Shown in pieces: positions 1 to 20,600 of a stretch of 64,000 nt of DNA (its first letter is position 1; every line of letters begins with the position of its first letter). The stretch lies in the IMG/VR virus record IMGVR_UViG_3300030098_004828, positions 62,001-126,000 of that record; one strand, 5' to 3'. The position numbers and the translations under genes are program-made. Under the pieces are notes generated by a model that worked only from the letters and a program-made list of their open reading frames with translations, was not told the DNA's origin and ran no database searches.

Positions 1-2
1 CT

Positions 3-3000
3 GAAGCTTTTGCAGAATATCATAAACTTCTAGGTCCTGGACAAGAATTTACTTGGCAAGGAAAAATATATAGCACAGATATGGCAGATGATGGTTCAGA
101 ACCTTCAGAAAATAATAATGCTATTAATAATGCAGATTCTAATGCTAATGCTGATAATTCAAATATGAATGATAACAGCGACTCAGAAGAAATTCTTAAT
201 AATGAAGAAGTAGATGAGTTTAATGAACAACCTCAATTTAAAAACAAAAAAATAAAAGATACTTTTAGAATGGATAATTCTTCTTCATTAGCATTTTTAG
301 AAAGTAAATCATCTCCTCTTTTTTCTCTTATAGCTGCTATTGGAGATACTGTTGATTCATATAAATCAGAAAATTTTATAGATCCAGGATCTAAAGAAGA
401 TTATGAAAAATGGTCAATAAAAAACACTACAGATAAAGCCGGTTATATAGATGAGGATGGTAATGTAATATCAGAAAAAGACTATGTAGAAGGAGAAGTT
501 CTTAAAGGAATGCAAGAAAGAACTAATTTAGCTCCAGATGTATTTGGGCAAGCAGTGGGTTATGATGCTAATGCAAAAACAGTGGATTATAAAGGAGGTT
601 CAAAACAAGGAAACTATTTAGAGTCAATGAATCCGGATGCAAATTATTTTGGATTTTCACAAGACACAGAAGGTAATTATATGTTTGAAAACAAATTAGT
701 TACAGATAACCAAGAAGGTACAGTATATAGTCCTACAAGTCAAACAAGATATAGAAGTGATAAACTTATAACAGGATATGAAGGAGATTATTCAGATGAT
801 TTTATTCAATATGATGCAGATGCACAAGAGTATATAGATTATTCTAATCCTGATCATGTAATTCCTGATCAAGCAGGATGGCTTACTCCTATAGCTAATC
901 AACAGCAAAATACAAATAATCCTAATCAACCAACAGGTTCTGATGATATATTTGCTAGATATGGAGGAGGTTTACCTTTGTTTCAAGATAAAGGAGAATT
1001 TAGTATTAATGAACATGGTATAATAGATACATCTGAAATGGAAGGATATGATCCAGATGATCTATATGATTTCCTAGCAGAAAATTATGGTAAAGTAGAT
1101 ACATCTAAACAGCAACAAGCTCTTCTTACAAAATTACAATCTCCAACTTTTAGAGATAGATATGCCGCTAATATATATAATATTACAGGAGAACAATTAT
1201 CTGAAGATGAATTAACAGAAAGAATAAATGCTCAGTATGATTTTACTGCAGCAGGTGCACCATTTCATACTGTATATCCACCAGTTTCACATAGTCCAGG
1301 AGGATTTCCTTATTGGAGTACTACAAATATAAATCCATATCAGCCTAAAGATATTGCAACGATGGACTACTTCGGAACGGGTAATATGATGGATAGAATG
1401 AGGGGTAATAAGGGAATGTTTTTTACTAATAAAGAAGGATATGATATTTCTGAACTACCTATACCAGAACTTGCCCAGTATAGTTTTGTACCTGGTTTAA
1501 ATAAAACAAGACAGGTAGGATGGATGGGTGATAATCCTTGGACTTTTCGTGATGATGCTGATGATACAATTATACATGAGTATGCACATTCATATAATAC
1601 TGATGTATCTCCATTATTTGCACCTGCAGGTAAACAATATATTAATCCAGGAGTTTATTATAATGATAAAGCTGGTGAACGTTATCAAGAATGGTTAACT
1701 AATTTATTTGGTGAAGATTATTTTGATGAAACTAAAACAGATTTTATTTCACAGTGGTCTATGCAACCTCAAGAAATAAGTTCTATGAGATCAGAAAATG
1801 AAGCAGCATTATTATCCTCAGGAATTTGGGATCATAATAAAGAAAAATTTGGTGAGCAACATTTAAATGAATTGTTAGAATCAGATTTTTTATTTCCTAG
1901 AGGTCATTCAATGAAGCATTTACAAGCACTGGGATATGGTGAACTTCGTGGTATGAATAAAGATTTGAGTAAACAACAAAAAGAATATGATCTTCAATTA
2001 ACTAGACTTAACCGTGGTGATTTAACTGATTATATAGATAGCTTTATTATAAATAATGAGGATGATGAATTTGATAGAGACTATGTTAAAGGTGCTATAA
2101 GTACAGATAAATTTAATGAGTTATTTAATCAAAGTCAAAGTCATTTAAAAGAAAAGAAAAGATATTCTAGTTATGATGAATTATTAAGTGACTATAATTC
2201 AGGTAAAAAACGTAAAAAAGAAAAAGCTTCAGAAATATTAGATTTACTTCAAGGTAATTTAAAAGGTGAAATAGATAATATATATCAACCTAATATTGAT
2301 GAACAAGAAGAAAAATTTAATAAACAAAAGGACAAAGTATTACCTAAAATGGAAATGTACTTTAATGAAATAGTAATGGATGATAGTGATGATTTAACAA
2401 GAGCAAAATACGGGGGATCATTACCAAAAGCTCAAGATGGTATATTTGGTATAATGCAAGATGCGCAAAATATGCAAATATTAGATGATCATTATGAGGG
2501 TAATGAAAATAAAACTTATTTTACAGGTAATCCTGTTATTGAGGGTTTAGGTGATCTTAGTAGTTTTTTCGGTACTCCAAGTTATATGCAAGGTATATAT
2601 CATGATCCAAAATATAATCCTCAAAATATAAATTATAATCCATTAGCAACTATAGATGCATTAAATGAAGACATGATTAATAGATTTGAAGGTCCTACTT
2701 TTAATAGGTCTGGTTATCCTCAAATTTGGGATCCAAAATTAATATATAATGATCTAATTAGAGAAGGTGGTTTGAGAGGAGAGCATGGATATATTCCACA
2801 AACAGTACGAGGTACAAAAAATGATCCAATACATAATTCTATACTTGAAGGTGATTTAAATATGCTTGAATATACAAACAATATGCTTCTTGCACCAAAG
2901 TATAGACAAACATTAAAAATAGAAGTAAGAGAAAGTTTAAAAGGTGATAAATCTTTTAATAGATTAAGTGAAAATGAAAAAACACAAATAGTTGAACAAT

Positions 3001-5312
3001 ATGTTCAAAAAATATTAGATGATAGATTTACATCAATAAGAAATACTATATGGGGAACTAGAAAAGAAAATGATATAGGAACTGCAGGAAGTTATTATTA
3101 TAGTTATGATAATGATAATCCATACCATGTAATTTCTAATAATCCAAATGCAAGTGTTTATACAGATATACATGAGAATCAACATGCAATGACTATGGGT
3201 AACCGTGGTTTAACAACTCATGCTTTTGATACTTATAAGGATGCTAAGTGGATGAATCCACAAGAATTTATGAAACTACAATATGAAGGTATAATACCAG
3301 AAGATCTTAAGTATCAAGAAGCTTTTGGTACAGGTAATTATTTAGCAGATCCAACTGAAATGGCTGCTAGAAGAGATGAAGTTATGTATTGGCTTGCATC
3401 TAAAGGAATTTATGATCATCACGGAAGAATAGAAGGTGTACCTAGTAAATATACTCCAGAAATAGATGCACAAATAAGATCAATAATAGATAGTGGTGAG
3501 GCTCCTCACTTCTTAGAAGAGTTCTATGGTACTGACAAAATGATTAATATGGGTCCCAAAATGGGAGATCAATGGAATAAAAAAGTTTCTCCAGAAGATA
3601 TGCTTCAAATTTGGAATACTATAGCAATGGAAGAAGAGATTGGTGATGATTTAGGTATTGAATATGGAATGGGTAAATATGGTAAAGAAATCCCATTACC
3701 TAAAGCTCAGATGTGGAATTCTGAAGTAGATGATATAACAACGGAAGATCTTTATAATTCTAATGCACAAACTTATGATGCTAATACAGATGTAACAGGA
3801 GGGGTATATGGTAATCAAGGTCATAGTTCTTATAATGATGGAACTGGATCTAATGCAGGTAATCAAGTATTTGTTCCTGAGCCTTATATAGGAAATGTAA
3901 ATGGAACATGGGGTGTAGATACATCTGCAACAGCAATTACAGATGCTATATCTAATCAAGCTCTTCCTAGCGGTACACCATATGATCCTGATTGGGAAGG
4001 TGATGATTTAACAAGAGATTTCCAAATGTTTGAAGATGCTTATGGAACAGATAATTTAGAAATATTAAAAAGAAATCTTACAGGTGCAGCTAATTTTGTA
4101 CCAGATGATACAACAGTTACAACAGAAACAACAGATACATCACCTACAGATGATGAATTATTTAATAGAGAACTTACAGATTTTACTGAAGAAGAAGAAG
4201 AACAATTAGAAAAAGAAAATAAAAGAAGTTTTAAAGATAGAATTGAGGCAGGATACAATAAGATGAGGAGATTTATGGATAGTAAAGGAATGCAGGTTGC
4301 AACTAAAACTGCTAAAAACATTGTAAATATTGCATCTCCTATTAATGCTGCATTAGAAGCAAGAGAAGAAAAAAGACAAAGAGAACAAAGAATGGATCAG
4401 ATTAGATATGCTGATAATGCATATCAAATAAAGGATGCTGATTTAACTGGCTCTCAAGGTAATTATGATCAATTTGGAAATTTTAGACCGTCTTCACAAA
4501 CTATAGTTATGAATAAAGGAAAGTATGGTACAGAATTAACAAACGCATTATATGGTGGTTTACCAAAAGCACAAATAGGTGCAAATGATAATGTTGCAAT
4601 AGAAGGTGATACTTCAGGTAATGTAAGATTGGAGGGTAATATAGATGTGTTTAATACTTGGGCAGATAGAAGTGCTAGCTGTAGCGGTGGTAGTTGTGAT
4701 TGGTCAAAGCAAGATAAATCAGGAGAAGTATTTGGAGGAATACAATTAGAAACGGGTGTTCAAGGAAGTCCCTCTATAACATCTACAACTACTCCTGCAA
4801 CAACAACAACTAATACTACAACTACAGTTGATGTAGGTGAATCAAATAATTTTGTACCAGAAGAAGTTACTACAACTACAACAACACCAGCTTCAACTAC
4901 TAAGCATTATAATCTTAATGATTTTGTATTTAATATAGGACCTAGAGCATATGCAGGATATGTAGGAGATTCTGGAATTGGATTTGGACTTGAAGCAAGT
5001 GCAGGATTTAAATCAAGAGATTTTAAAAACTTTGATCCATATGCTACAACTAGAGGTTCAATAGGATATTTGGGAGACGGTTGGGGAGTGTCAGGTTTTG
5101 GTGATGTTGATCTTTTAAATAAAACAATAAATCCAGGTGCAAGAGTTAATTATGGACCTGGATATATAGAAGGTACATATGATATAAATACAGGTAATCC
5201 AAATATAATGGCAGGACTTTCTTTTAGCTTTAAAGAAGGTGGTGAAATGGATTTAGATGAAGAAACAATTAATCAATTAATAGCTGCAGGTGCAGAAATA
5301 GAAATATTATAA
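3..5312 (+). CDS. Large modular virion (cargo/ejection-type) protein, 5'-partial, with two HExxH zincin-like modules and a C-terminal beta-rich module
   Basis: The frame is open from base 3 (EAFAEYHKLLGPGQEFTWQGKIYSTD) into the ORF-track Met at 81, so the gene starts upstream of the window. Contains IHEYAH (1572-1589) and IHENQH (3168-3185), each followed by a PxE..R motif, plus repeated YGG..LPKAQ motifs. Confidence 0.75.
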   Translation, partial: EAFAEYHKLLGPGQEFTWQGKIYSTDMADDGSEPSENNNAINNADSNANADNSNMNDNSDSEEILNNEEVDEFNEQPQFKNKKIKDTFRMDNSSSLAFLESKSSPLFSLIAAIGDTVDSYKSENFIDPGSKEDYEKWSIKNTTDKAGYIDEDGNVISEKDYVEGEVLKGMQERTNLAPDVFGQAVGYDANAKTVDYKGGSKQGNYLESMNPDANYFGFSQDTEGNYMFENKLVTDNQEGTVYSPTSQTRYRSDKLITGYEGDYSDDFIQYDADAQEYIDYSNPDHVIPDQAGWLTPIANQQQNTNNPNQPTGSDDIFARYGGGLPLFQDKGEFSINEHGIIDTSEMEGYDPDDLYDFLAENYGKVDTSKQQQALLTKLQSPTFRDRYAANIYNITGEQLSEDELTERINAQYDFTAAGAPFHTVYPPVSHSPGGFPYWSTTNINPYQPKDIATMDYFGTGNMMDRMRGNKGMFFTNKEGYDISELPIPELAQYSFVPGLNKTRQVGWMGDNPWTFRDDADDTIIHEYAHSYNTDVSPLFAPAGKQYINPGVYYNDKAGERYQEWLTNLFGEDYFDETKTDFISQWSMQPQEISSMRSENEAALLSSGIWDHNKEKFGEQHLNELLESDFLFPRGHSMKHLQALGYGELRGMNKDLSKQQKEYDLQLTRLNRGDLTDYIDSFIINNEDDEFDRDYVKGAISTDKFNELFNQSQSHLKEKKRYSSYDELLSDYNSGKKRKKEKASEILDLLQGNLKGEIDNIYQPNIDEQEEKFNKQKDKVLPKMEMYFNEIVMDDSDDLTRAKYGGSLPKAQDGIFGIMQDAQNMQILDDHYEGNENKTYFTGNPVIEGLGDLSSFFGTPSYMQGIYHDPKYNPQNINYNPLATIDALNEDMINRFEGPTFNRSGYPQIWDPKLIYNDLIREGGLRGEHGYIPQTVRGTKNDPIHNSILEGDLNMLEYTNNMLLAPKYRQTLKIEVRESLKGDKSFNRLSENEKTQIVEQYVQKILDDRFTSIRNTIWGTRKENDIGTAGSYYYSYDNDNPYHVISNNPNASVYTDIHENQHAMTMGNRGLTTHAFDTYKDAKWMNPQEFMKLQYEGIIPEDLKYQEAFGTGNYLADPTEMAARRDEVMYWLASKGIYDHHGRIEGVPSKYTPEIDAQIRSIIDSGEAPHFLEEFYGTDKMINMGPKMGDQWNKKVSPEDMLQIWNTIAMEEEIGDDLGIEYGMGKYGKEIPLPKAQMWNSEVDDITTEDLYNSNAQTYDANTDVTGGVYGNQGHSSYNDGTGSNAGNQVFVPEPYIGNVNGTWGVDTSATAITDAISNQALPSGTPYDPDWEGDDLTRDFQMFEDAYGTDNLEILKRNLTGAANFVPDDTTVTTETTDTSPTDDELFNRELTDFTEEEEEQLEKENKRSFKDRIEAGYNKMRRFMDSKGMQVATKTAKNIVNIASPINAALEAREEKRQREQRMDQIRYADNAYQIKDADLTGSQGNYDQFGNFRPSSQTIVMNKGKYGTELTNALYGGLPKAQIGANDNVAIEGDTSGNVRLEGNIDVFNTWADRSASCSGGSCDWSKQDKSGEVFGGIQLETGVQGSPSITSTTTPATTTTNTTTTVDVGESNNFVPEEVTTTTTTPASTTKHYNLNDFVFNIGPRAYAGYVGDSGIGFGLEASAGFKSRDFKNFDPYATTRGSIGYLGDGWGVSGFGDVDLLNKTINPGARVNYGPGYIEGTYDINTGNPNIMAGLSFSFKEGGEMDLDEETINQLIAAGAEIEIL

Positions 5313-5314
5313 CT

Positions 5315-7942
5315 ATGGCAAGAGTAAAAATAAAAAAGCTTCCGCAAGGAATGGAACTTAAAGATGGTAAACTAGTTAGAGTTATGGCTTCAGGAGGAGC
5401 TACTAGAACTGGAGATCAAAGAAATTATGGTTTAGTTAAATTGCCTGAGTTAATTGATGAAAAAGATGATAGCGGACAAAAAGCATATAGTGAAGTTAAT
5501 AAAACTTTAGGACCTGTACCAAGAGATGAAGCTAATCTTGAGGCAGAAAAAGGAGAAACTGTTTTAACTGATATGAATAATGATGGTGATTTTGAGTTAT
5601 ATGAAATTACTGGTAATAGACATTCTAGTGGAGGAACTCCTTTAAGATTGCCACCTCAATCTTTTGTATATTCTGATACTCAAAAAATGAAATTTAATAA
5701 AGATGAGTTAGCTGAATTAGGACTAGATCAAAAAAAGAAAATTACACCAGCAGATGCATCTAAAAAATTTGGATTAAATGAATTTATAGAAAAATTGGAT
5801 AATGAATATGATGATCCAATTTCAAAAGAAACAGCTCATTATATGTTAGATAAAAACAAAATGAAGTTATCTCACATAGCGTTTTTACAAGAACATAAAA
5901 AAGAATTTAAAGAAGGTGTACCTTTAGCATCTTATCCTTATATACAAAAACAAGGTATAGATCCAATACAATTTTCTTCACAAGTTCAAGGTATAACTGA
6001 ACAAGAAGCTCAAGCAGAAGCATTACTACAAATGCCTGTAGATATGCAAGCAAAAATAATGGAGTTAAAAAACTTCATGCAACAAGTAAGTCAAAAAGAT
6101 GCACAAGAAACTCAGGCAGTTAATCATCAATTAGCAATGGGTGAACCTCCTGTTGCTCCAATGCCTCAAGGGCAACAACCTATGATGCCACCTCAAGGAC
6201 AACCAATGGCTCCTCCTCCAGGAATGCCTCAAGGAGATCCTATGCAAGCGCCTATGCCACCACAACAACCAATGGCACCACCTCAAGACATGGCTCAACA
6301 ACCTATGCCACCAATGGGACAACCAATGGTTAAAGAAGGAGGAGATCCTTTTATGAATAATGACTTATATAATTTCATGTATGGTGGAGATTTACCTAAA
6401 GCACAAAATGGAAGAAATGTATATTACAGTCCAAATGCTACAGCTAGTATGGATGCATTAACTCCGTATTATTCAATAACTATGGCTGAAGATATAGGAG
6501 AAGGGGGATATGCATATACACAAAAGGGACCAGAAGGAGGATATTATGGTGATGTAGATTCTGATCATATGGAAGTTTTCTATAATAGAAATAAAGATAT
6601 CATGTTAGATATGGGTATTGAAAGCTATGATCAGTTTAATCCTGAAACTCATACTCAAGATTATCAAAATAAATATAATGAAAGACTGAAAAATGCATGG
6701 GATAATAATCCAGATTTACAACAACAATTTAGAAATAAACTTAATAATCAAGATGCAGGATGGGATGAATTCTCAGAATTAGGATTTTATGGTCCAGAAG
6801 GTAGTTCTACACATGCTGATAATCAATTTGGAGAATATACTTGGAGTAGACCTGGTTTAAATGCACTTGAAGTAGAAGAAGATCCTTGTCCTAATAGAGA
6901 TAGTGTTAAAGCACAATGTGATGCTCAAGGATTACCATTTATTGAAGCAGAATGTAGATGTGGAGAAGGAGAAAAAGATGATCCTATACAAAAGGTAACC
7001 GAAGAAGTAGATCCAGAATTTTGGTTGCAGGATAAAATGAAAGTTGCTGGAGCTATAGCTAATAAATTTAATATTAAAAAAAGATATCCGTGGGCTCCTA
7101 CATATGATGAACAGCAGATAGATCCTGTATTTACAAGTCCAGATAGAGAGATAGCAGCTTTAAGTGAAAATGCTAATCAAGCATTAACTGCTGCATCTAA
7201 ATTTTCAGGACCTCAAAGAACCGCTGCTTTTGCTTCTCAAATACAAGGAAAATTAGCTGATCAAATAAATGATACAATAAATAAAAATGCTGCTGCTAAT
7301 ATTAAAGTTGCAAATGATTCATTAAAAACAAATGCTCTTTTAGCACATGAAGCTGATAAATTAAATAAAGCTTCTAAGCAGAATCTATATGACAAGACAA
7401 TATTAACAGATGAAAATTATGATATTGCTGTAGCTAAAGCAAATGAGCAAATATTAAAACATACAGCAAATGCATATACTAATAGAGCATATACTCATAA
7501 TTTAAATGAATTATATCCTCAATTCAATATTAATCCAGAAACAGGTGGAATAGCAGAGTTTGATCCTAAATATACACAGGAACCTCAACCTAAAACTCCA
7601 GCTGAAAAAGATGCTGCTTTAAAAGAGTATATAAGAAAAAATAATGAATTGAAAAAACAGAACATGGAGATAGGGGATATGCCTGAAGAATTAAGAAATC
7701 AAATATTTTTAGATGGAAATAATCCAGGAGGTGATGATCAGTGGAAAAATTTATTTACAGATCCTTCATCTAGTCCTTATCCTACAGGGCCTGAGGCTAC
7801 TGGACCAAGTCCTTTAATTGATCCAAGTATGTTAGGTTACCCTGGTGCTAAATGGGGAAAAGAAACGAGAAAGCAAAGAATAGCAAGAAAAGGAGCGGAA
7901 TTAAGACAATGGTTTTCACCATTAAGAAAAAGATGGGTATAA
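5315..7942 (+). CDS. Putative virion structural/cargo protein (875 aa) with a Pro/Gln/Met-rich linker
   Basis: Long ORF starting 2 nt after the upstream stop. N-terminal ANLEAEKGE...GNRHSSGG motif of a kind recurrent in crAss-like virion proteins; MYGGDLPKAQ motif shared with the upstream gene. Confidence 0.6.
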   Translation: MARVKIKKLPQGMELKDGKLVRVMASGGATRTGDQRNYGLVKLPELIDEKDDSGQKAYSEVNKTLGPVPRDEANLEAEKGETVLTDMNNDGDFELYEITGNRHSSGGTPLRLPPQSFVYSDTQKMKFNKDELAELGLDQKKKITPADASKKFGLNEFIEKLDNEYDDPISKETAHYMLDKNKMKLSHIAFLQEHKKEFKEGVPLASYPYIQKQGIDPIQFSSQVQGITEQEAQAEALLQMPVDMQAKIMELKNFMQQVSQKDAQETQAVNHQLAMGEPPVAPMPQGQQPMMPPQGQPMAPPPGMPQGDPMQAPMPPQQPMAPPQDMAQQPMPPMGQPMVKEGGDPFMNNDLYNFMYGGDLPKAQNGRNVYYSPNATASMDALTPYYSITMAEDIGEGGYAYTQKGPEGGYYGDVDSDHMEVFYNRNKDIMLDMGIESYDQFNPETHTQDYQNKYNERLKNAWDNNPDLQQQFRNKLNNQDAGWDEFSELGFYGPEGSSTHADNQFGEYTWSRPGLNALEVEEDPCPNRDSVKAQCDAQGLPFIEAECRCGEGEKDDPIQKVTEEVDPEFWLQDKMKVAGAIANKFNIKKRYPWAPTYDEQQIDPVFTSPDREIAALSENANQALTAASKFSGPQRTAAFASQIQGKLADQINDTINKNAAANIKVANDSLKTNALLAHEADKLNKASKQNLYDKTILTDENYDIAVAKANEQILKHTANAYTNRAYTHNLNELYPQFNINPETGGIAEFDPKYTQEPQPKTPAEKDAALKEYIRKNNELKKQNMEIGDMPEELRNQIFLDGNNPGGDDQWKNLFTDPSSSPYPTGPEATGPSPLIDPSMLGYPGAKWGKETRKQRIARKGAELRQWFSPLRKRWV

Positions 7943-11673: not shown

Positions 11674-14600
11674 ATGGCAGAAGAAACACAAATAATTCCA
11701 GAAGGTTCAGGAAAAACAGGTAATGTTTTTGAAGAAGGGTTAAATGTTAATAGCACTCCTAATGATGCTAATTTAGATTTAACATCATCTTCTGTTGTAG
11801 ATAATTTACCTTATGATAATACACCTTTACATACACCCGGATGGAAAAATATATCAGATGTTGTAGCTGAACAAGGTGAATATTTTGCAGGACCTCCTGG
11901 AATGAATATAGATCCTTCTATATGGGCAGATGTTGGTAGAATGGATAAGATGTTAGCTGAACATGGTCTTGGTAATAATAATAACTTTTATAATCCTCTT
12001 CCTGGACAATCTGCAGGATCATTTAATCCTTTTGCAGAAAGCTCAGGAATTCTTGATCCTAATACTCTTGAAGGAAGAAGAGCTAAATTAACTCAAGTAA
12101 TTAATAATGCTCAACAAAATACACCTGGAAGAAATCCCGCATATAGAGATCCTATTTATTATGGAGCTAAGGCTTTTAATTTAGATAGATATACTAGTCA
12201 TCCAGCTTTTGATAGATTAGGTTTTCATCCTTTTGCAGATAATGATGCTTACTATAATGCAAATTCTAGTAAATGGGAAAACTTTCAAAGAACTTGGGGA
12301 GCTTTTGGTAGTATGTTTCATGAAGCATTTACAAGCCCTTGGAGATCTATAGGAGACTTTTTAGAAGGTGATTGGAATAGGGCTGATTATATAGGAGCTT
12401 CAGCAATGGAAGATGCTATGAGAATAGGTAGATCTACAAAAGGTGGAGTAGGAGGATTTTTTAATGATTTATTTTTAAATTTTTCATATACTTTAGGTAT
12501 TATTTCAAATGTTGTTTTAGAAGAAATGGCTCTTGCTGGAATAACATATTTATCAGGAGGTACAGCTGCTCCTGCTGCTGGTGCTAGAACAGTTTATAAT
12601 GTTGGAAGAATAATGAGGACTGGTGATAAAATAAATGATGCAAGAAAAGCTTCTCAAAGAACATTAGAAGCTATGAAAAATTATAACAATGTTAATAATT
12701 TTTGGAAGTTTACAAGAGGTGTAGGTAGATGGACTATGCCACAAACAGCTCAATTCTATAGAAGATTGCGTACTGCAGGTAGTACTGTAGATAACATGAA
12801 CAATCTAGGGAAATTAAGATTGGGTGCTGGTGCTCTATATAGAGATCTTAGAATGGCAAATTTAGCTTGGTCAGAAGCTAAAATGGAAGCAGGTCTTGTT
12901 GAAATGCAATTGCGTAATAAAAAATATCAAGAATATAGAAGAGCTAATAATGGAGCTCATCCAGATGAAGAATGGTTAAACGCATTAAATGTAGATGCAT
13001 TAAATGCAGCACAAACTACAATATTTTGGAATGCTCCTTTTATTCATTTAACTAATCAATTTGTTTTTCCTGGCTTAGGACGTGGTTTTAGAGGTGTAGG
13101 TAGACAATTTGATGACTCATTAGATGCAGTACCAGATGCAATACAAAGAGAATTAAAGAAACAAAAACCAAGTGGTATGCCTGGAAAATTTTATGATGCA
13201 GGTAAAGGTGTTTCTAGAATTAAATCAGAAGGTCTTAAAGGAGGATTAACTAAAGGTGCAAATTATGCATTAAGATATTTTGGAGCTAATGTTGGTGAGG
13301 GTGCGCAAGAGCTATATCAAGAAGCTGTTGCTGTAGGTGTAGAACACTATTATGGAAGTCTTTTTGATATGAGATTATCTACAGGATTAGATCTTCAAAG
13401 AGCTGATATGGAATTGTCTGCACAACAAGGTAGTAAATTATTTTGGGATTCTTTTCAAGAAGGTGCAAACTCTCAAATGGGATGGAATGGTTTTAAAGTT
13501 TTTATGTCTGGATTTATGATGGGGGGATTAGCAAGAATGGTTCAAACTCCAGTTTTAGATTGGGCTCCCAATTATGTTAATAAAAAATGGAATCAAGCTA
13601 AGTATGATAAATACGAAAAGCAAAAAGAAAAATTTAAAGCAAATGCTTTAGAGTATTTAGAAAACGGTAGAAAAGATCCTTTACATGTATTTGATAAAAC
13701 AAAAATAAATGTATTAAATCAAAGAGAAGCAAATCAACAAATGTATGCTGCATCTTTTTCTGGACAAGCTATGGAACATTATGATGCAAAAGATTGGGCT
13801 AAATTTGAACACTTTGAAACATATGTATCTATGGGTAAAACTCATCATTTTATTGATATAATAGATGATTACTTAGCATTAGATAATAAATCTTTTAGAG
13901 AAGCTTTTCCAGTAGAAACATATCCTGATTCAGTTGCAAAAATTAGATCTAGATTAGAGCAAAACAAAAAGGAAATAAATGAAATGAAAAGGAAGTATGA
14001 GGAAAGAAAAGAATTATACTCCAATCCTTTTAGTGAAGACAGATTTGAAGAAGGAACTGTATTATATCAACAAGAAAAATTACGAAGACTATCCTATGAC
14101 CATGCTAGAAAATTAGCTATGTATGTAGATTCATCTTTTGAAAGAGCTGTAGAAAGAATAAACAATATGTATAAAGCTTTATCTAGTGGGGATCTTAAAG
14201 TTTTAAAAAATATACAAGCTAATGAATTAGATCCTTTAATGGGTAAAAGACAATTAGAAGCAGAATTAGAATTATTAAATGTTGAACTAACAGGAACACT
14301 TAGTCAAAAAGATATAAAATTTAAAACTAAAAAGAAAGAACTTCTTACAGAGTTTTCTAATATAATTCATAATCCTAAATATCAAACTCCAAAAACAAAA
14401 GTATTTAGTAAAACTCATATGCCTAAATTAAGAAAAGCTTTTACAGATTATCTTAATTTTTTAGCTAAAGCAAAAAATGAATTTGTTGAAAGTAAAAATA
14501 TTGACAAAGCTCTTAATGCAATAGTTGATACACAATGGTTAGAAAAAAGATCAGGAGATCTTCATGATGCTGCAAGAATTTTGATGAATCCTAAAAAACT

Positions 14601-17600
14601 AGAACAAGTAGCAGATAGAATAAACTTTTCTATGAGAAGAGTTTGGAATACTATGCGTGATAAAAATCATCAAATAAAAGAAATAGATAAGTATATTAGA
14701 GAGACAGAAAGAATGGCTGTATTACAAAAGCTTTCAGAAGAAGATATATATCCACATCCAATTCAAACAATGATATACTTAGAGCAAGGTATAAAACCTA
14801 CTCTATTTTATAATAAGAAAGGTATTATAGATCAATTAAATCAACCAGAAGAACATAAAAAAATACTTAGTATTTTTAATTTAAGTGATGATACATCAGA
14901 AGATGGAAAAGATGCTAAAAAAGAAAATGCAGAAGAAATAGAAAAACAAGCTAAAGAAAGTAAAGAAAAAGATGAGGTAGAAAAAGAAGAAACAGATTTA
15001 ACAGTGGGTGGAACAGGGGAAGTTCCTGATGAAAAAAAGAAAGAAAAAGAAGAAGAAGTAGAGTATGAAGTTCCAAAAAATACTGATAGTGATAGTACTA
15101 TAGTAGATTTAGTACCAAAAAATAATGATAAACCTCCAGCATCTTTAGGTAAAGTGTTAAGTTCTGTAAACAATGATACAAAAATTCAAAATGTTCTTAA
15201 TAATAAATATGAACAATGGGCAGCTAATCAAGCACTAGAAGATCCTAATAGAAGTATAATGACTCAAGAATTATGGGAACAAGATGAAACATTAGGAGGT
15301 GCAATAAAATCTGCAAGAAAAGAACTTTTTAAATTATATGCTAAAAAGGTAAGTCTTAAAGATAGACAATCAACTCCTTTTGATACTTGGTTAAAATCTA
15401 ATGCCGCAAATTTAGAAGTTGATGATATTATTGAAAAATATCCTTTAGCTACTAGCAGTGTGCAAGATATTATGATAGGTGATGTTACAGCAGTACAACC
15501 TATGCCTGAAGAAAAATTAAATCCTAGTTTAGAATCTATAGTATCTGATGGTAAAAAAGATAAAACAGGAATATGGATTCTTAAATCATCAATAGAATTA
15601 GATCCTGATGCAGATCCTAAAGAACTTTATACAGTTACTGATAATAATAAAATTGATTTGTCTGAGAAGTTTTTTCATTTAGATCCTGCATCTTTAGATC
15701 CAGATGGTTATGATACATTAGATGAAGCACAAAGAGCTAAAGATAAAATACTTAAATGGTTAGGTAAACCAGAAGATAGAGATTTTGTTTTTGATGGAAT
15801 ACAGTTTAGAAGAGGAATGAGTATTGTTAAAGGAGAAGATCTTAATGATTGGAAAAATGCTGAACAAGAAGATAAAGGAAATTATGAATGGACAGTAATG
15901 GCCAATAAAAAAACTGTAGAAAATAATAATAATGTATGGATTCAAAAAAAGGTTGGAAATACTATAGAAAAAGGAGACAAGCCTATAGTATTAGAAGAAG
16001 GTGATTGGGCAGCTGATGGATGGGTTATTGAGTTTGATGCAAAAGAATTATCACAAAAAGAAAAACAAAAAACAAAAACTAAATTACAAAAGACAGAACC
16101 TTTACAATTTTTTGCTATTACAGAAAGTAAAGGTGAAACCACTTATACTAAAATAAAAAGACACGAGAAGCTTTTAAAATCAATGACTCCTGAAAAACAA
16201 AAGAATCTTGTATTACGTATAATGAGAATGGAAGACTTTGAAGAAAAAATGAAGATTCCAGTAAAAAAATTAACACCTTTAGAATTTGAAACTAAGCAGC
16301 CAAATAAGAGAATTAGAAAAGGATATGTTAAACATAGAGTCTTTTTAGAATATGATGGTTATGATATTGCAGAACTTCAAGGTATACATTCTTCAGTAAT
16401 ACTAGATGAAAACAATAAGGAATTAAATCCTATGACAATGTCTAACAAACAAATCCTTGAAACATTTGTTATGGGTGAGCATGATAAAGCTAGAGGTGTA
16501 ACAGAACAAGAATTTGCAGATACTGTTAGAAATAACTATAAGCAAGGATATCTTATAATGAAAAAGATAGATGAATATATGGGAGAAAACTTAGCAACTG
16601 AGATTCCTTTCTATATAGAGGGTAAAAAGAATCCTGTCTTAGAAGATATAGGTATTACTATACAAGCTGGTAATATAGCATATTCAACTTCAGTAGCTAA
16701 TAGAAGTACATTTGATCAATTAGAATATAAATCTGCAGATAGTAAAATAAATAAAGATGGTTCTAAAGGTAGTCAAGTTATTTATAGTTTATATAAAGAT
16801 AAAAATGGAGATTGGAGAGAAGCTCCTTTTGATAATTTTGATCAAGCTACTACAGAGAATGAAGATTATAGAGATTCACAATTAGAATTAATTGAGAATG
16901 ATAGAAAGATGGTAGATTTAGATATTAAGTCTTTAGGAAGATATGTAATGGTTATTAGAGATGATAGAGGGGTTTATACTTATGCAGCTTTACAACCTAG
17001 AGAAAAAACTTCTGTAGAGTTAGAAGAAATGTTTACTCAATTAAAAGAAAGACATATAGAAACTTTAAAAGAAAACTATGTATCTGTAGAGGGAACAAAT
17101 AAAAGAATGATTAAAAAGGGTAAAAAATATACAGATCAAGGTTTTGGAATGCAATACAATAATGAATTTAATTCAAACTTTTCAGAGACCCATTTCATTG
17201 CTAGTAAAACAAAAGGAGATGTTATTGTACTAGGAGTAGATCCTTATGGAAATATTAATCTAGAGTATTTTAATAGGATAACAAAGCATGAAACACGTGT
17301 GTCACTTAATGAAGAAGAAGTGGCCACTGCATCAAACTTTTTAGAATTATTAAATTTACTTAATGAAAAATGGAAAAAAACAGAATGGGCTAAAGCTTAT
17401 AAAAAAGTAGAGGGAACAAAAAAAGCAGTTAAAGATGTTAATAGACCTAACTTTAAAATACAACCTATAGACTTTAGAATTTCATTACCAAGAACTATAA
17501 CTACAGAACAATTATCAGATGTTAAAATATTAATACAACCTGAAATAAGAAAAAATATACGTACAGTATTAAGTTATACAAAACAATCTGAAATAGATAT

Positions 17601-20600
17601 GCTAACTGCAAATGCAAGTTCTATACAATATAGACATTCATTTCTTAAAACGTCTTCAGAAAAGAAAATAGAATCAGATGAAAGAGAGGCAATAAATGAA
17701 CCAGAAGCTAATAAGATAGGAACTACAGACAGTGTAACTACAATGTTTACCAATTATCTAAAAAACGGTAAAGCTTCAAATGAATTATTAGATTCTTTAT
17801 CAGATGCTTTAGTTGCAGCTCAACAAGACATGTCTGTTTATGCAGCACAAGCTCTTGATATAGTTAAGAAAGCAGGACTAACACACCATGATGTTAAAAA
17901 TGCTCTTGATTTTGTTTACTCTTTTAAATTTGATAGTGATTTTGTTAATCCTATTACACAAAAAGTAATAGGAACAAAACAAGATCTAATGGAATATGTT
18001 CATACAATAGCATTAGGAAAGAAAAAAGTTACTGAATATACTCAAGAAGAATTAGATAATATGGATTCTGTATTTGAAAGTATAGATAATTTACACGATG
18101 TTGTACAAGCTGTAAATAAACCTATACTTCAAAGAGCTAATCAACTTTTAAAAGATGACAACTATAAGGTAGAGCTTCAAGCTATGGTTGATAATAAACT
18201 TTACAAATCTATGCCGGGTGGAACTAGTACACAAAAAGCTAAACAGAAAGGTCCTGCTGTAAGTATAGTTAATAAAGAAAAACAATTTAATTTAAAAGCA
18301 TATCAAAAAGCTCAAGAAGAACTTGAACAGTTAAATAATGCTTTAGAAGATGCAGCTTTTGATGAGGCAGTAGTACGTCAAGAATATATTAATTTAAAAA
18401 CTAATAAAGCTAAAAATGACTTTATACAAACATTAGAAGATACAGGTGATTTTAGAATTTTAGAAAATAAAAATAAATGGAATAGAAGAAATGTACTTTT
18501 AGAATTAATGAATCAATATGAAGCTGATATTAAAGGTATAGATCCTAATTTAGCAGGAAAATTTTTACCAGAAGTATTAAAATCTATAGATGAACATGAT
18601 ATAGCTAGACGTCAAGAGTTTATTGAATTTATGAGAGAGAATCTTCCACAATTTATGGTGGATAGAATAGATAATTTAGAATGGAATTCTGAAAAAATGG
18701 GAGCTTTGATGGGAGCTTTTGTAATAGATTTAAAATCAGTTGGTCAAGGTTTAACATTAGATAATCTAGTTGGTAAAGTTTATTTGAGCAAAACTTCTAA
18801 ATTTGATTATCATGAGGCAGGTCATGCTACTATGAGAATGCTTATGACAGATGAAGAAATTGCTACATGGATGGCAACTGCTAGAAAAAATGTTAGAGCA
18901 CAAATGAGATCTAAAGAGGGTTACAAAATAGGTGAAAATGCTGATGGTAGTTCTATAATAGTTAAAAATGTAAAACAAGCTTTAGAGCATTTAAGATTAC
19001 AGTCCTATATGTATTCTCAAATGTCTGATAATCTATTAGAGAAAAGACTTTATGAAGAAGATATCTGGGATAATTTTCAATTATATAAAGAGAATCCTAA
19101 AAATAAAAAAGTAAGAAAAGAATATAAAGGATTCTTTAGCTGGTTAGTTGAAATGATTAAAAAAGTATTTAAGTTTTTTACAACTAGTTATTGGAATAGT
19201 ACAAGGTCAAGTGGATTGGGAGGTCCTTATGATTCTTTATTTGAAAAAATAGATAATGGAAAATATAGAACAAGAGCTATTCAAAAAAATCAATTTACAG
19301 AAGGATTTTTAGAAGGAGGTTTATCTTTTAAATATGCTTTAAAACCTATTCCTACAGGAAGACCTAAAGTATTAGCAACAAGTAAATTAATTGAAGGGCA
19401 AGAGCAAGAAGTTCTTAAACAAGTTACAGAGTATTTTCCGCCAGAAGAGGAAGCAAGATATGTAGCTAATATAGTTAAGATATATTTAGAGCTGTTAGAT
19501 AAGATGGAGGGTAAATACATACCCAATAAAGTTCTATTAGATGCTGTTAATATTGTTACAGAGAGTCTTAATCCTAAAAGACAAATATTCCAAGATATGG
19601 ATCCTGGTGATTATAGAAAAATAAAATCACAATTAAAAAAAGACTATGCAGCATTAAGTAGTCCAGAAGCAAAAAGAGCTTTAATGAAATCTGCAAGAGT
19701 TGCTTTAACTAGACATGATCAATTTCAAGATGCATTTGATGAAATGATAATGGATAAAGATCATGAATTAGAAGGAAGAACTAATGAAACAAGTTGGGAC
19801 GAACAGTTACAAGAAATAGGACCAGAAAAAACAGCTTCAAGATTTGTAAGAGATCTTATTGCCACAACAGTTCTTACTGATCAAGCAGGACAACCTTTAG
19901 GAGATAAAAAATATGGTTTTAAATGGTTAGATGATGCTAAAACAATACCTGCTGTTCAACCTGTAGATTATATGAAAGCTTTTAATGCACTTCTTTTAGC
20001 AGGAGAAGGTATTGAAAATCATTATGAAAGATTTAGAACTATATGGAATCAAACTCACTATAAGCCTGATCTTAAAGCAGTTATGGTAAATATACTTAAT
20101 TTATTGGGTGTAAAACCTGCCCAATTAAGAGGTAACAGTTGGATGCAAAATGTAGAAAAAAATGGGACTGCAAAACAACAATGGTATTTGGGTAGAATAA
20201 TTAAAGCTTTTGATACAGTAAGAGTTGATTATTATAATTTAATTCAAAGTGATTCAGGAAATACAAAAGGTTATGTCAATATAATTAATGCAGCTCATAA
20301 AGATGATGCATCTAATCAATTAAGAAGTGCAACTAATGTATATTTAGGTCTTGATTCAAAATGGCAAGGAGAAGGAAAAGAATCAAGAAAACTTCACAGG
20401 CGTGCAACAGGTGTTTTAAATGATTGGAATAATATATTGTCTGAAGGAAAACCTATGACTGATGCAAAATTAGCAAGAAAGTCTAAAGAAATAAGTACAA
20501 GACTAAGAGAAAGATTGGGTATTGAACTTCATCCTGCAACTATAGAAAATAGTATAATTAATTTTATAGAACTTAGTACTGAATATCAAAAACAATTATT

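What the first reader, a model, noticed from the sequence alone, without database searches (positions are those of the whole stretch)
4584..5243. Membrane beta-barrel-like module at the end of a virion protein, ending GLSFSF just before a GG motif
Seen: about 215 aa of Gly/aromatic-rich alternating strands (FVFNIGPRAYAGYVG, IGFGLEASAGF, GSIGYLG, WGVSGFGDVDL, GARVNYG, YIEGTYDI, IMAGLSFSF) with one Thr-rich insertion (TSTTTPATTTTNTTTT...VTTTTTTPASTT). There is no signal peptide. Established: outer-membrane barrels end in an aromatic beta-signal recognised by BamA. Inference: if cleaved at the flanking GG motifs, the module would be a free barrel ending in Phe, possibly inserted into the host outer membrane during ejection, or acting as a receptor mimic or decoy.
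Basis: inference. Interest (0 to 1): 0.6.

Follow-up and report, generated by a model that had tools for sequence, protein, structure and literature searches.

The report
Porin-like barrel module in phage cargo protein
The end of a giant, hypervariable protein of a marine crass-like phage carries a rare, conserved module of about 220 residues that is predicted to fold like a bacterial outer-membrane beta-barrel and is bracketed by conserved Gly-Gly junction motifs; whether it really enters the host's outer membrane is untested.

Summary
Window 4581-5231 encodes a Gly- and aromatic-rich, strongly period-2 amphipathic module with a Thr-rich insertion. It ends GLSFSF and is followed by KEGGE.

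The module is a true but very rare domain. About a dozen protein clusters among billions carry it. All are the syntenic "cargo-slot" protein of related marine crass-like phages, and none is cellular. No Pfam, PHROG, NCBIfam or PDB sequence match was found.

It has three parts:
- an N-subdomain holding the only Cys pair in about 2270 residues;
- a variable loop;
- a seven-strand C-subdomain whose last strand fits the beta-signal pattern GxxΦxΩ.

AlphaFold models are of moderate to low confidence (pLDDT 62 and 53). They are all-beta meanders whose best structural matches are transmembrane barrels (designed TMB10 Z 14.1, KdgM 12.3, autotransporters 11-12). Soluble 10-strand barrels also score Z 9-10.

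The flanking GG/LPxAQ motifs coincide with module-shuffling breakpoints in homologues.

Cleavage at these motifs and outer-membrane insertion remain inference. Nothing supports a receptor-mimic or decoy role.

The parts
1..5312 (+). 3' 1769 codons of a 2572-aa ORF ('A3'; genome 59594-67312) that starts 2406 bases upstream of the window. It is the modular, hypervariable protein in the cargo-gene slot of a crass-like phage.
   Evidence: Synteny with homologue contigs. TerL, portal and MCP lie upstream.
4551..4580 (+). Upstream junction motif YGGLPKAQIG. Family consensus is [KR]YGG[SA]LP[KIM][AF]Q[TDI]G.
   Evidence: The same motif precedes the module in P0012, and an LQPGG variant precedes it in P0004/5/9/15/16.
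4581..4766 (+). N-subdomain of the module: three predicted amphipathic strands plus a loop carrying the Cys pair.
   Evidence: Alignment A1, AF2 strands, face analysis.
4680..4697 (+). CSGGSC, the conserved Cys pair. These are the only two Cys in the last ~2480 residues of the protein.
   Evidence: The first Cys is nearly invariant, and a second Cys is present in all homologues and in the paralogue CQGGGC.
4767..4913 (+). Thr-rich variable linker or loop. In homologues it is replaced by an acidic DADGDGxIT-containing stretch or a short Gly/Ser linker. It is partly encoded by an imperfect ACA/ACT repeat.
   Evidence: The strand topology places it on the side opposite the module's two ends (inference).
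4914..5231 (+). C-subdomain: seven predicted Gly/aromatic amphipathic strands joined by 2-6-residue turns. This is the best-conserved and best-modelled part (pLDDT about 70-84).
5196..5231 (+). Last strand NPNIMAGLSFSF. It fits the beta-signal-like pattern G-x-x-[hydrophobic/aromatic]-x-[aromatic/hydrophobic], with the Gly invariant.
   Evidence: Alignment A1 invariant G227, columns 224-232. The beta-signal consensus itself comes from my own knowledge of the BAM literature.
5232..5246 (+). Downstream junction KEGGE (the GG motif).
5247..5312 (+). Family-wide conserved C-terminal tail MDLDEETINQLIAAGAEIEIL plus the stop codon. It is present in every member whatever module precedes it, including the orthologue B3, which lacks the barrel module.
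960..986 (+). Further copy of the junction motif (YGGGLPLFQ) in the same protein.
2409..2435 (+). Further copy of the junction motif (YGGSLPKAQ).
3678..3710 (+). Degenerate copy of the junction motif (YGKEIPLPKAQ).
6380..6406 (+). Junction motif YGGDLPKAQ in the next gene (875 aa, window 5315-7942).

Best explanation
Window 4581-5231 encodes an orphan, phage-specific domain that folds as a small (about 10-strand) membrane-type beta-barrel. It consists of three strands plus a probable disulfide loop, one long variable surface loop, and seven Gly/aromatic strands ending in a beta-signal-like strand.

The domain is one interchangeable cassette of a modular protein in the cargo or ejection gene block of a marine crass-like phage. 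The cassettes are joined by conserved GG/LPxAQ junction peptides.

The most likely mechanism is inferred, not shown. The protein is packaged in the virion and extruded unfolded through the tail at infection. The barrel cassette then inserts into the host outer membrane, either spontaneously or through BAM, possibly after release at the junction peptides. There it would anchor or help build the trans-envelope ejection conduit. In T7, P22 and N4-like phages this role is assigned to alpha-helical proteins.

Shown: domain boundaries, conservation, rarity, amphipathic pattern, predicted fold class, and module shuffling at the junction motifs.

Inferred: virion location, cleavage, membrane insertion and role.
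For: - Real, conserved domain: exhaustive HMMER search found P0003, P0004, P0005, P0009 and P0012 (E 7e-38 to 3.5e-4). Further members appear. Alignment A1 has conserved Gly, Tyr and Cys columns.
- Fold: the AF2 model (pLDDT 62, pTM 0.54; C-subdomain blocks 63-84) is an all-beta meander.
- Foldseek against the PDB: the top hits are mainly outer-membrane barrels (KdgM, NanC, designed TMB10, Omp33, autotransporters), with best E 3.6e-4.
- VIA-align: designed TMB10_163 Z 14.1, rmsd 3.0, 135 of 143 residues aligned; KdgM Z 12.3.
- ESM-atlas fold search returns KdgM, Phenol_MetA_deg, DUF2490 and PorP/SprF barrel families.
- An independent model of the most divergent homologue again matches transmembrane barrels at Z 10-11.
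- Sequence pattern: the hydrophobic face of the seven C-subdomain strands has 0% charged residues in 260 alignment cells and stripes of 5-6 alternate positions. Aromatics make up 42% at stripe ends against 12% inside. The opposite face is 26% charged and 38% small-polar.
- Period-2 amphipathicity is z 2.6-3.3 above shuffles and the highest in the protein.
- The last strand fits GxxΦxΩ with an invariant Gly. Phe precedes the GG in A3, P0003, P0004/13, P0005/14 and the paralogue in P0014/15.
- The only Cys pair in about 2480 residues sits in a loop of the module and is conserved. This suggests a disulfide, and so an extracytoplasmic site of action.
- No alpha-helical transmembrane segment exists in the six large neighbouring proteins.
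- Context: the gene lies downstream of TerL, portal and MCP in a co-directional block of giant ORFs. The portal and DNA polymerase are nearest to crass-like, Cellulophaga and Flavobacterium phages. Homologues occupy the same slot in 87- and 101-kb contigs.
- In ΦcrAss001 the genes in this position encode virion cargo proteins expected to form the transmembrane channel (PMC10172136).
- Junction motifs coincide with BLAST breakpoints, and the module order is permuted between P0004 and P0009.
Against: - Model confidence is only moderate to low, and the alignment has 10 rows from about 4 lineages.
- AF2 also drew strands through the Thr-rich linker, which cannot be real membrane strands.
The same alternation would fit a soluble barrel with a hydrophobic core. 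Nitrobindin/Rv2717c (Z 9-10) and LolA (Z 8) are in the hit list.
- There is no sequence relationship to any OMP family and no cellular homologue.
- The terminal aromatic is not universal (Leu in P0009/15/16, none in P0012). In five homologues the module is internal.
- Conserved Gly lie on both faces.
- Loops are short on both sides, and strands are short (7-13 residues).
- A 10-strand monomer cannot itself conduct DNA.
- The orthologue in the sister genome (B3) lacks the module entirely, so it is dispensable for the basic ejection process.
- No virion proteomics exist, and no evidence of cleavage.
Confidence: 0.42

Rival explanations
1. A soluble or virion-internal beta-barrel or sandwich (nitrobindin/lipocalin/LolA-like). 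The hydrophobic face is its core. It serves as a packing, plug or ligand-binding cassette of the cargo protein and never enters a membrane.
For: Soluble 10-strand barrels match the model at Z 9-10 (Rv2717c, nitrobindin) and LolA at Z 8. Alternating polar and apolar strands fit either topology. pLDDT is 62 and 53. There is no OMP sequence homology. The terminal aromatic is not invariant.
Against: The best hits in four independent structural searches are membrane barrels and stand above the soluble ones (Z 14.1 and 12.3 against 10.1). Hydrophobic stripes run 5-6 alternate residues in every strand, with aromatics at the ends rather than the centre. The putative 'core' face is 20% Gly. The putative 'surface' face carries seven conserved Gly columns.
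Confidence: 0.27
2. A protomer of an oligomeric beta-pore. Several copies of the cassette, from the multiple cargo copies per virion, assemble after ejection into a larger barrel, in the manner of beta-pore-forming toxins or secretin-like rings. That larger barrel would form the actual outer-membrane channel for DNA.
For: The same amphipathic strands support this reading. Lysenin and CDTb pores appear among the weaker Foldseek hits. ΦcrAss001 cargo proteins are present in up to 12 copies (PMC10172136). A monomeric 10-strand barrel is too narrow for dsDNA (established geometry).
Against: The models close into a monomeric barrel. The pore-toxin hits are weak (probability 0.15-0.6, TM 0.15). No oligomer prediction was run.
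Confidence: 0.12
3. A Gly-rich outer-membrane or LPS-binding domain that perturbs the envelope without being an integral barrel, in the manner of insect attacins and gloverins.
For: Attacin_C and Gloverin were the nearest named clusters by language-model features for two different members of the family (scores 0.81 and 0.76).
Against: Those scores are at the level shuffled sequences reach a third of the time, by the tool's own calibration. There is no Pfam match even at E 10. The likeness is probably compositional.
Confidence: 0.07
4. Not a functional fold of its own: a low-complexity Gly/aromatic spacer of a giant protein that AlphaFold renders as a barrel by default.
For: Low to moderate pLDDT. 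AF2 also built strands in the poly-Thr linker.
Against: Position-specific conservation across lineages at 28-54% identity, including invariant Gly, Tyr and Thr and a Cys pair. A paralogous second copy in P0014/P0015 has the same ends. The whole unit is shuffled as a cassette.
Confidence: 0.05

Closest known systems
Small monomeric outer-membrane beta-barrels (KdgM/NanC 12-strand porins; OpcA/OmpT-size 10-strand barrels; designed TMB10_163)
   Same: Predicted all-next-neighbour antiparallel barrel. Gly/aromatic-rich amphipathic strands. An uncharged hydrophobic face with aromatic-rich ends. A last strand fitting GxxΦxΩ. Structural matches at Z 12-14.
   Different: No signal peptide. The module is embedded in a 2572-aa phage protein. 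No sequence homology to any OMP family. Short loops on both sides apart from one variable loop. The terminal aromatic is not universal. Membrane residence is untested.
Podovirus ejection proteins that form the outer-membrane pore (T7 gp14, P22 gp7, DEV/N4-like gp73) and ΦcrAss001 cargo proteins gp45/gp46
   Same: The gene lies in the block between tail genes and giant virion-enzyme genes of a crass-like phage. The proposed role is at the host envelope after extrusion through the tail (PMC10172136; PMC11445570).
   Different: For DEV gp73 and ΦcrAss001 gp45 the papers read report a predicted alpha-helical membrane segment; that T7 gp14 and P22 gp7 are helical too is from my own knowledge. No helical segment exists here, and the candidate membrane element is a beta-barrel. 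There is no sequence similarity. Virion packaging is not demonstrated for this protein.
Type Va autotransporter beta-domains (EspP, BrkA, NalP, Hbp, AIDA-I)
   Same: A barrel at the C-terminal end of a very large multidomain protein. Structural matches at Z 10-12.
   Different: Autotransporter barrels have 12 strands with a helix through the pore and are always C-terminal behind a Sec-exported passenger. Here rmsd is 4-6.7 Å, there are about 10 strands and no signal peptide, and the module is internal in five homologues.
Phage-encoded 'moron' outer-membrane proteins (Lom/Ail-like, phage OMP_b-brl proteins, Pfam Phage_OMP PF24653)
   Same: Phage genes encoding OMP-type barrels. There are weak fold matches to several in BFVD.
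   Different: Those are free-standing, signal-peptide-bearing proteins made in the infected or lysogenic cell. No PF24653 match exists anywhere in this genome. BFVD E-values are 1.4e-3 or worse.
Polyvalent or polymorphic giant phage proteins (modular multi-domain virion proteins)
   Same: Cassettes are shuffled between relatives. The N-terminal domain and C-terminal tail are conserved with variable middles. Two HExxH motifs lie in the same chain.
   Different: The conserved GG/LPxAQ junction peptide and a barrel-like cassette are not features I know from described polyvalent proteins (own knowledge; not searched exhaustively).

Membership tests
OMP-type transmembrane beta-barrel (fold class) | Closed antiparallel meander barrel with an even number of strands | tested here: inconclusive
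   AF2 models are meanders matching transmembrane barrels (Z 14.1, rmsd 3.0, 135/143 residues to TMB10). pLDDT is only 62 and 53. Four of the 14 modelled strands lie in the poly-Thr linker. Closure could not be inspected without coordinates.
OMP-type transmembrane beta-barrel (fold class) | Outward-facing hydrophobic belt with aromatic girdles and a polar interior | tested here: inconclusive
   One face of each strand is 0% charged and 71% aliphatic plus aromatic. Aromatics are 42% at stripe ends against 12% inside. Which face points outward was not determinable here.
OMP-type transmembrane beta-barrel (fold class) | C-terminal beta-signal (GxxΦxΩ with a terminal aromatic) recognised by BAM | tested here: inconclusive
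   The pattern is present in all members with an invariant Gly. Phe is the last residue before the GG in 5 of 7 lineages. It is never the protein's C-terminus unless cleavage occurs, and cleavage is untested.
OMP-type transmembrane beta-barrel (fold class) | Sec signal peptide for delivery to the periplasm | tested here: not met
   The module starts at residue about 2330 of a 2572-aa protein. Delivery would have to be by virion ejection.
OMP-type transmembrane beta-barrel (fold class) | Sequence homology to a described OMP family | tested here: not met
   Pfam at E up to 10 gave none. NCBIfam gave none. A PDB profile search gave none. PF24653 is absent. No cellular homologue was found in 1.8 and 5.8 billion proteins.
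OMP-type transmembrane beta-barrel (fold class) | Demonstrated membrane integration (heat modifiability, lipid insertion) | not testable with these tools
   Needs bench work.
Phage ejection/cargo proteins (T7 gp14-16, P22 gp7/16/20, ΦcrAss001 gp45/46) | Present inside the virion and released at infection | not testable with these tools
   Only synteny is available. The gene is co-directional with, and downstream of, TerL, portal and MCP, among giant ORFs as in crassviruses. No cultured relative has proteomics.
Phage ejection/cargo proteins (T7 gp14-16, P22 gp7/16/20, ΦcrAss001 gp45/46) | Sequence or profile similarity to known ejection or cargo families | tested here: not met
   PHROGs and Pfam gave none. 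tblastn against 50,697 phage records gave none.
Type Va autotransporter beta-domain | 12-strand barrel that is strictly C-terminal, with a pore-filling helix and a Sec-exported passenger | tested here: not met
   About 10 credible strands and no helix in the model. The module is internal in P0005/9/14/15/16. There is no signal peptide.
Attacin/gloverin Gly-rich antibacterial proteins | Match to Attacin_C or Gloverin profiles | tested here: not met
   Only language-model feature scores of 0.76-0.81 were obtained, which is chance level. There is no Pfam hit.
Modular (polyvalent-like) phage giant proteins | Independent cassettes shuffled between relatives around conserved termini | tested here: met
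   The order of P0004 and P0009 modules is permuted, with breakpoints at 574/581, 853/854 and 1095. A3 and B3 share only the N-terminal ~160 aa and the C-terminal tail.

The most novel reading that the evidence does not exclude
A tailed phage delivers, through its tail, an unfolded cassette that is a genuine OMP-type beta-barrel. The cassette is released from a modular cargo polyprotein at conserved GG/LPxAQ junctions. It then uses its GxxΦxF beta-signal to be folded into the host outer membrane by the host's own BAM machinery, or self-inserts. This would give a beta-barrel, rather than helical, outer-membrane anchor or pore for genome ejection.
Probability: 0.2. Interest if true: 0.85.

Novelty: new variant of a known kind. 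Interest (0 to 1): 0.55.

Why it matters
How short-tailed phages of Bacteroidota, including the very abundant crassviruses, breach the outer membrane is unresolved. For the outer-membrane components proposed in model podoviruses, a helical membrane segment is reported for DEV gp73. I take T7 gp14 and P22 gp7 to be helical from my own knowledge. A beta-barrel cassette delivered from outside would be a different solution. It would also be a natural example of an OMP reaching the membrane without Sec export.

The GG/LPxAQ junction peptides mark where cassettes are exchanged, and possibly where they are cut. They could serve as a handle for parsing other unannotated giant phage proteins.

If the module turns out to be a soluble barrel, the finding shrinks to a new orphan domain family in a hypervariable phage protein.

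Tried and rejected
- Pfam, PHROGs and NCBIfam scans of the module, the whole protein and homologues gave no family.
- PF24653 Phage_OMP was searched in the whole record with no match.
- tblastn against 50,697 phage records found nothing with the whole protein, the module at E up to 1, or the two downstream proteins.
- The first word search, over residues 1480-1743, was blank. It was probably swamped by poly-Thr words.
- The IMG/VR scan with the module found no relatives. The alignment was too variable for that tool.
- PDB sequence searches gave nothing. The profile search returned only a calmodulin-like loop hit at E 3.8, matching the DADGDG linker of the homologues. The whole-protein search also gave nothing useful.
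- HMMER hits P0006-P0008 were rejected as repeat or ankyrin artefacts. The ankyrin hit matches the tail 'LIAAGA'.
- The Attacin/Gloverin and DUF6321 leads from the ESM features were rejected as chance-level.
- The autotransporter reading was rejected because of the module's position and strand number.
- A receptor-mimic or decoy role has no evidence of any kind.
- I looked for model coordinate files so as to decide the in/out orientation. None were available in the script box.
- Complex prediction, the sequencing-run tools and the metagenome or genome contig scans were not used, because no claim here depends on them.
Full report
**1. What is there**

The window is bases 62001-126000 of a 245,646-bp IMG/VR virus record.

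The ORF holding the finding is open to the window's first base. In the genome it runs from 59594 to 67312 and encodes 2572 aa. I call this protein A3. A3 residue number equals P0001 number plus 829.

The core is 21% Gly and 16% aromatic, against 9% and 10% for the whole protein. Its period-2 hydrophobic moment is the strongest in the protein. Only 23 and 7 of 2000 shuffles reach it for the two subdomains.

**2. Genome context**

Upstream lie TerL, portal and a major head protein. Downstream, on the other strand, lie DNA polymerase, primase, exonuclease, dUTPase and ribonucleotide reductase.

The DNA polymerase is nearest to Cellulophaga phage phi14:2, at 35% identity. The portal is nearest to Leptolyngbya phage Lbo-JY46, to crass-like phages (csAssE-Sib, cr109_1, IAS virus), and to Cellulophaga and Flavobacterium phages. 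With about 30% G+C, this is a distant crass-like phage. Its host is most probably a marine member of Bacteroidota, which is Gram-negative. That host assignment is inference. A TARA Oceans fragment of the family (P0017) supports a marine origin.

A3 sits in a co-directional block of giant ORFs of 2728, 3329, 2572, 875, 1216, 5791 and 2593 aa. In ΦcrAss001 the equivalent block after the muzzle gene encodes virion cargo proteins. Of these, gp45 and gp46 are expected to form the trans-envelope channel (PMC10172136). The 'virion protein' label is therefore plausible by synteny but not shown. No PHROG or Pfam family, and no GenBank phage, matches A3 or its two downstream neighbours.

**3. The module is a real but very rare domain**

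An exhaustive HMMER search of 1.84 billion representatives with residues 1612-1743 found only a few true hits:
- a self fragment;
- P0003 (61% identity);
- P0004 (E 1e-17);
- P0005, P0009 and P0012.

The remaining hits are repeat or ankyrin artefacts. Word searches added P0013 to P0019. No cellular protein and no annotated family turned up.

P0004 and P0009 lie in the same syntenic slot of 87- and 101-kb contigs. P0012 lies near a faint crAss muzzle hit.

Alignment A1 shows that the module runs from the upstream junction to the downstream GG. It has three parts:
- **N-subdomain** of about 62 aa (window 4581-4766) with a conserved Cys pair.
- **Variable linker**: Thr-rich here, an acidic DADGDGxIT-containing stretch in most homologues, and Gly/Ser in P0012.
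- **C-subdomain** of 106 aa (window 4914-5231), rich in Gly and aromatics.

A3 has only nine Cys in 2572 residues. Seven are in the N-terminal domain and two are in this module. That argues for a disulfide, and so for action outside the cytoplasm. This is inference.

P0014 and P0015 carry a second, paralogous copy. It has a CQGGGC loop and ends LNVKF-RDGG-LP(I/K)AQTG.

**4. Fold**

AlphaFold2 with A1 gave pLDDT 62 and pTM 0.54. The C-subdomain blocks score about 63-84, and the model is an all-beta meander. Four of its 14 strands lie in the poly-Thr linker and are not credible. That leaves 3 + 7 = 10 strands.

| Search | Result |
|---|---|
| Foldseek vs PDB | Top hits mainly outer-membrane barrels; best E 3.6e-4, TM 0.40/0.55 |
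| VIA-align, all PDB clusters | Designed TMB10_163 Z 14.1 (rmsd 3.0, 135/143 aligned); KdgM 12.3; VhGalP 12.0; autotransporter domains 11-12 |
| Same search, soluble barrels | Rv2717c/nitrobindin Z 9-10; LolA Z 8 |
| ESM-atlas fold search | KdgM, Phenol_MetA_deg, DUF2490, PorP/SprF and unnamed Bacteroidota/viral clusters; TM 0.43-0.55 |
| BFVD (viral structures) | Only weak matches (E 1.4e-3 or worse) to phage OMP morons, a NIOZ-UU157 protein and a 'large polyvalent protein' domain |
| VIA-align, second model (P0012 module, pLDDT 53) | Again best matches transmembrane barrels, Z 10-11 |

**5. Membrane barrel or soluble barrel?**

Across seven non-redundant sequences, one face of the seven C-subdomain strands has 0% charged residues in 260 cells. 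It is 48% aliphatic, 23% aromatic and 20% Gly. Its stripes cover 5-6 alternate positions. Aromatics are concentrated at stripe ends (42%) rather than inside (12%).

The other face is 26% charged, 38% Ser/Thr/Asn/Gln/His and 20% Gly.

Stripe length and end-placed aromatics are what a 24-Å lipid belt with aromatic girdles would give. A soluble core would be expected to place aromatics centrally and to avoid 20% Gly. Conserved Gly occur on both faces, however, so that argument is not decisive.

The last strand fits the beta-signal pattern GxxΦxΩ, with the Gly invariant in all members. The consensus itself is from my own knowledge of the BAM literature. The final residue is Phe in five lineages, Leu in one lineage (P0009/15/16), and absent as such in P0012.

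By the model's topology, both ends of the module and the Cys loop lie on one side and the variable linker on the other. That is the arrangement of an OMP with one long surface loop. This is inference.

None of the six large proteins A1-A6 has a helical transmembrane segment.

I estimate a membrane-type barrel fold at about 0.6. The full ejection-and-insertion mechanism stands at about 0.4.

**6. The GG motifs**

The upstream motif YGGLPKAQIG belongs to a family-specific junction peptide, [KR]YGG[SA]LP[KIM][AF]Q[TDI]G. It occurs four to five times in A3, once in the next gene, and repeatedly in every homologue. It is absent from the other giant proteins.

BLAST breakpoints between P0004 and P0009 fall exactly at these motifs. 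The barrel cassette and the acidic cassette are swapped in order between the two proteins. The motifs therefore delimit exchangeable cassettes.

Whether they are also protease sites is untested. A3 carries two HExxH motifs. Cleavage could just as well follow the conserved Gln as the GG.

After the last GG, every family member ends in the same tail, roughly (D/E)GGE-x-(V/I)DID-x-ET-x-x-LIAAGAE(I/L)EI(L/V/M). This includes B3, which lacks the barrel cassette. The tail is thus a signature of the protein family, perhaps an incorporation signal, and not part of the barrel.

**7. Comparison with the sister genome**

The record is two related genomes joined head to tail at about 124,782. They share 75-90% nucleotide identity in conserved genes.

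Their cargo slot is the most divergent region. A3 (2572 aa) and B3 (828 aa) share only about 160 N-terminal residues at 30% identity, plus the tail. The barrel module has no second copy in the record.

The cassette is therefore accessory and fast-evolving. That fits a host-envelope-specific function. It also shows the cassette is not essential for ejection as such.

**8. Verdict**

Its structural inference is supported at the level of prediction. Its functional inferences, cleavage and outer-membrane insertion, remain open, and the decoy idea has no support.

Relative to known systems, this is a new variant of a phage ejection or cargo module. It has an orphan sequence family and a porin-like predicted fold. 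Comparison proteins such as DEV gp73 and ΦcrAss001 gp45 instead carry a predicted membrane helix (PMC11445570; PMC10172136).

No alternative genetic code was needed.

Noticed in passing
whole record G000 (window = 62001-126000); junction near genome 124,782: The 245.6-kb 'genome' is two related but distinct phage genomes of about 121-125 kb joined head to tail. Gene order repeats, and position 2 aligns with 124,783. Conserved genes share 75-90% nucleotide identity, while cargo genes are nearly unalignable. The likely cause is an assembly chimera of two co-occurring strains, so the CheckV value of 100% completeness is misleading.
   Followed up: partly
window 29070-36851 (+): A 2593-aa protein combines a CCA-adding tRNA nucleotidyltransferase (PolyA_pol head plus RNA-binding domain), an HD domain and a LysM peptidoglycan-binding domain. 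This is an unusual fusion in the giant-ORF block.
   Followed up: no
window 11674-29049 (+): A single 5791-aa ORF with no Pfam or PHROG assignment was seen. Homologues of 5073-5459 aa occupy the same slot in related contigs and carry a faint DUF7831 hit. It may be the virion RNA-polymerase-like giant protein of crass-like phages. This was not tested.
   Followed up: no
window 1575-1589 and 3171-3185 (+): The same protein carries two HExxH motifs (HEYAH, HENQH) in cassettes without any family match. The first cassette is 27% identical to part of the upstream 3329-aa protein. They may be zincin-like peptidases that act on the junction motifs or on the cell wall.
   Followed up: no
window 5247-5309 (+); also B3 C-terminus (genome ~188,370-188,444): A conserved C-terminal tail of about 21-25 aa...DID.ET...LIAAGAE(I/L)EI(L/V/M), is shared by all proteins of this slot regardless of their cassettes. 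It is a candidate virion-incorporation or interaction signal. It also drew spurious ankyrin-repeat hits in HMMER.
   Followed up: partly
homologues P0004/5/9/14/15/16, linker between the two subdomains (alignment A1 columns ~125-145): In these homologues the linker that is Thr-rich in the window carries a DADGDGxIT motif. This resembles an EF-hand or dockerin-type calcium-binding loop. The only PDB profile hit was calmodulin, at E 3.8.
   Followed up: no
genome 59594-60100 (upstream of window; A3 residues 1-160) and B3 residues 17-182: The conserved N-terminal domain of the slot protein holds seven Cys (CPGP...C..C...C pattern). It is the only sizeable region shared by A3 and B3. It may be a metal-binding or virion-anchoring domain.
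   Followed up: no
locus L008 (contig of P0012, 3x coverage): The region upstream of P0012 is split into many short ORFs, where relatives have giant ORFs. One fragment gives a faint crAss_MUZ (PF25731) hit. This is probably frameshift errors in a low-coverage assembly.
   Followed up: no
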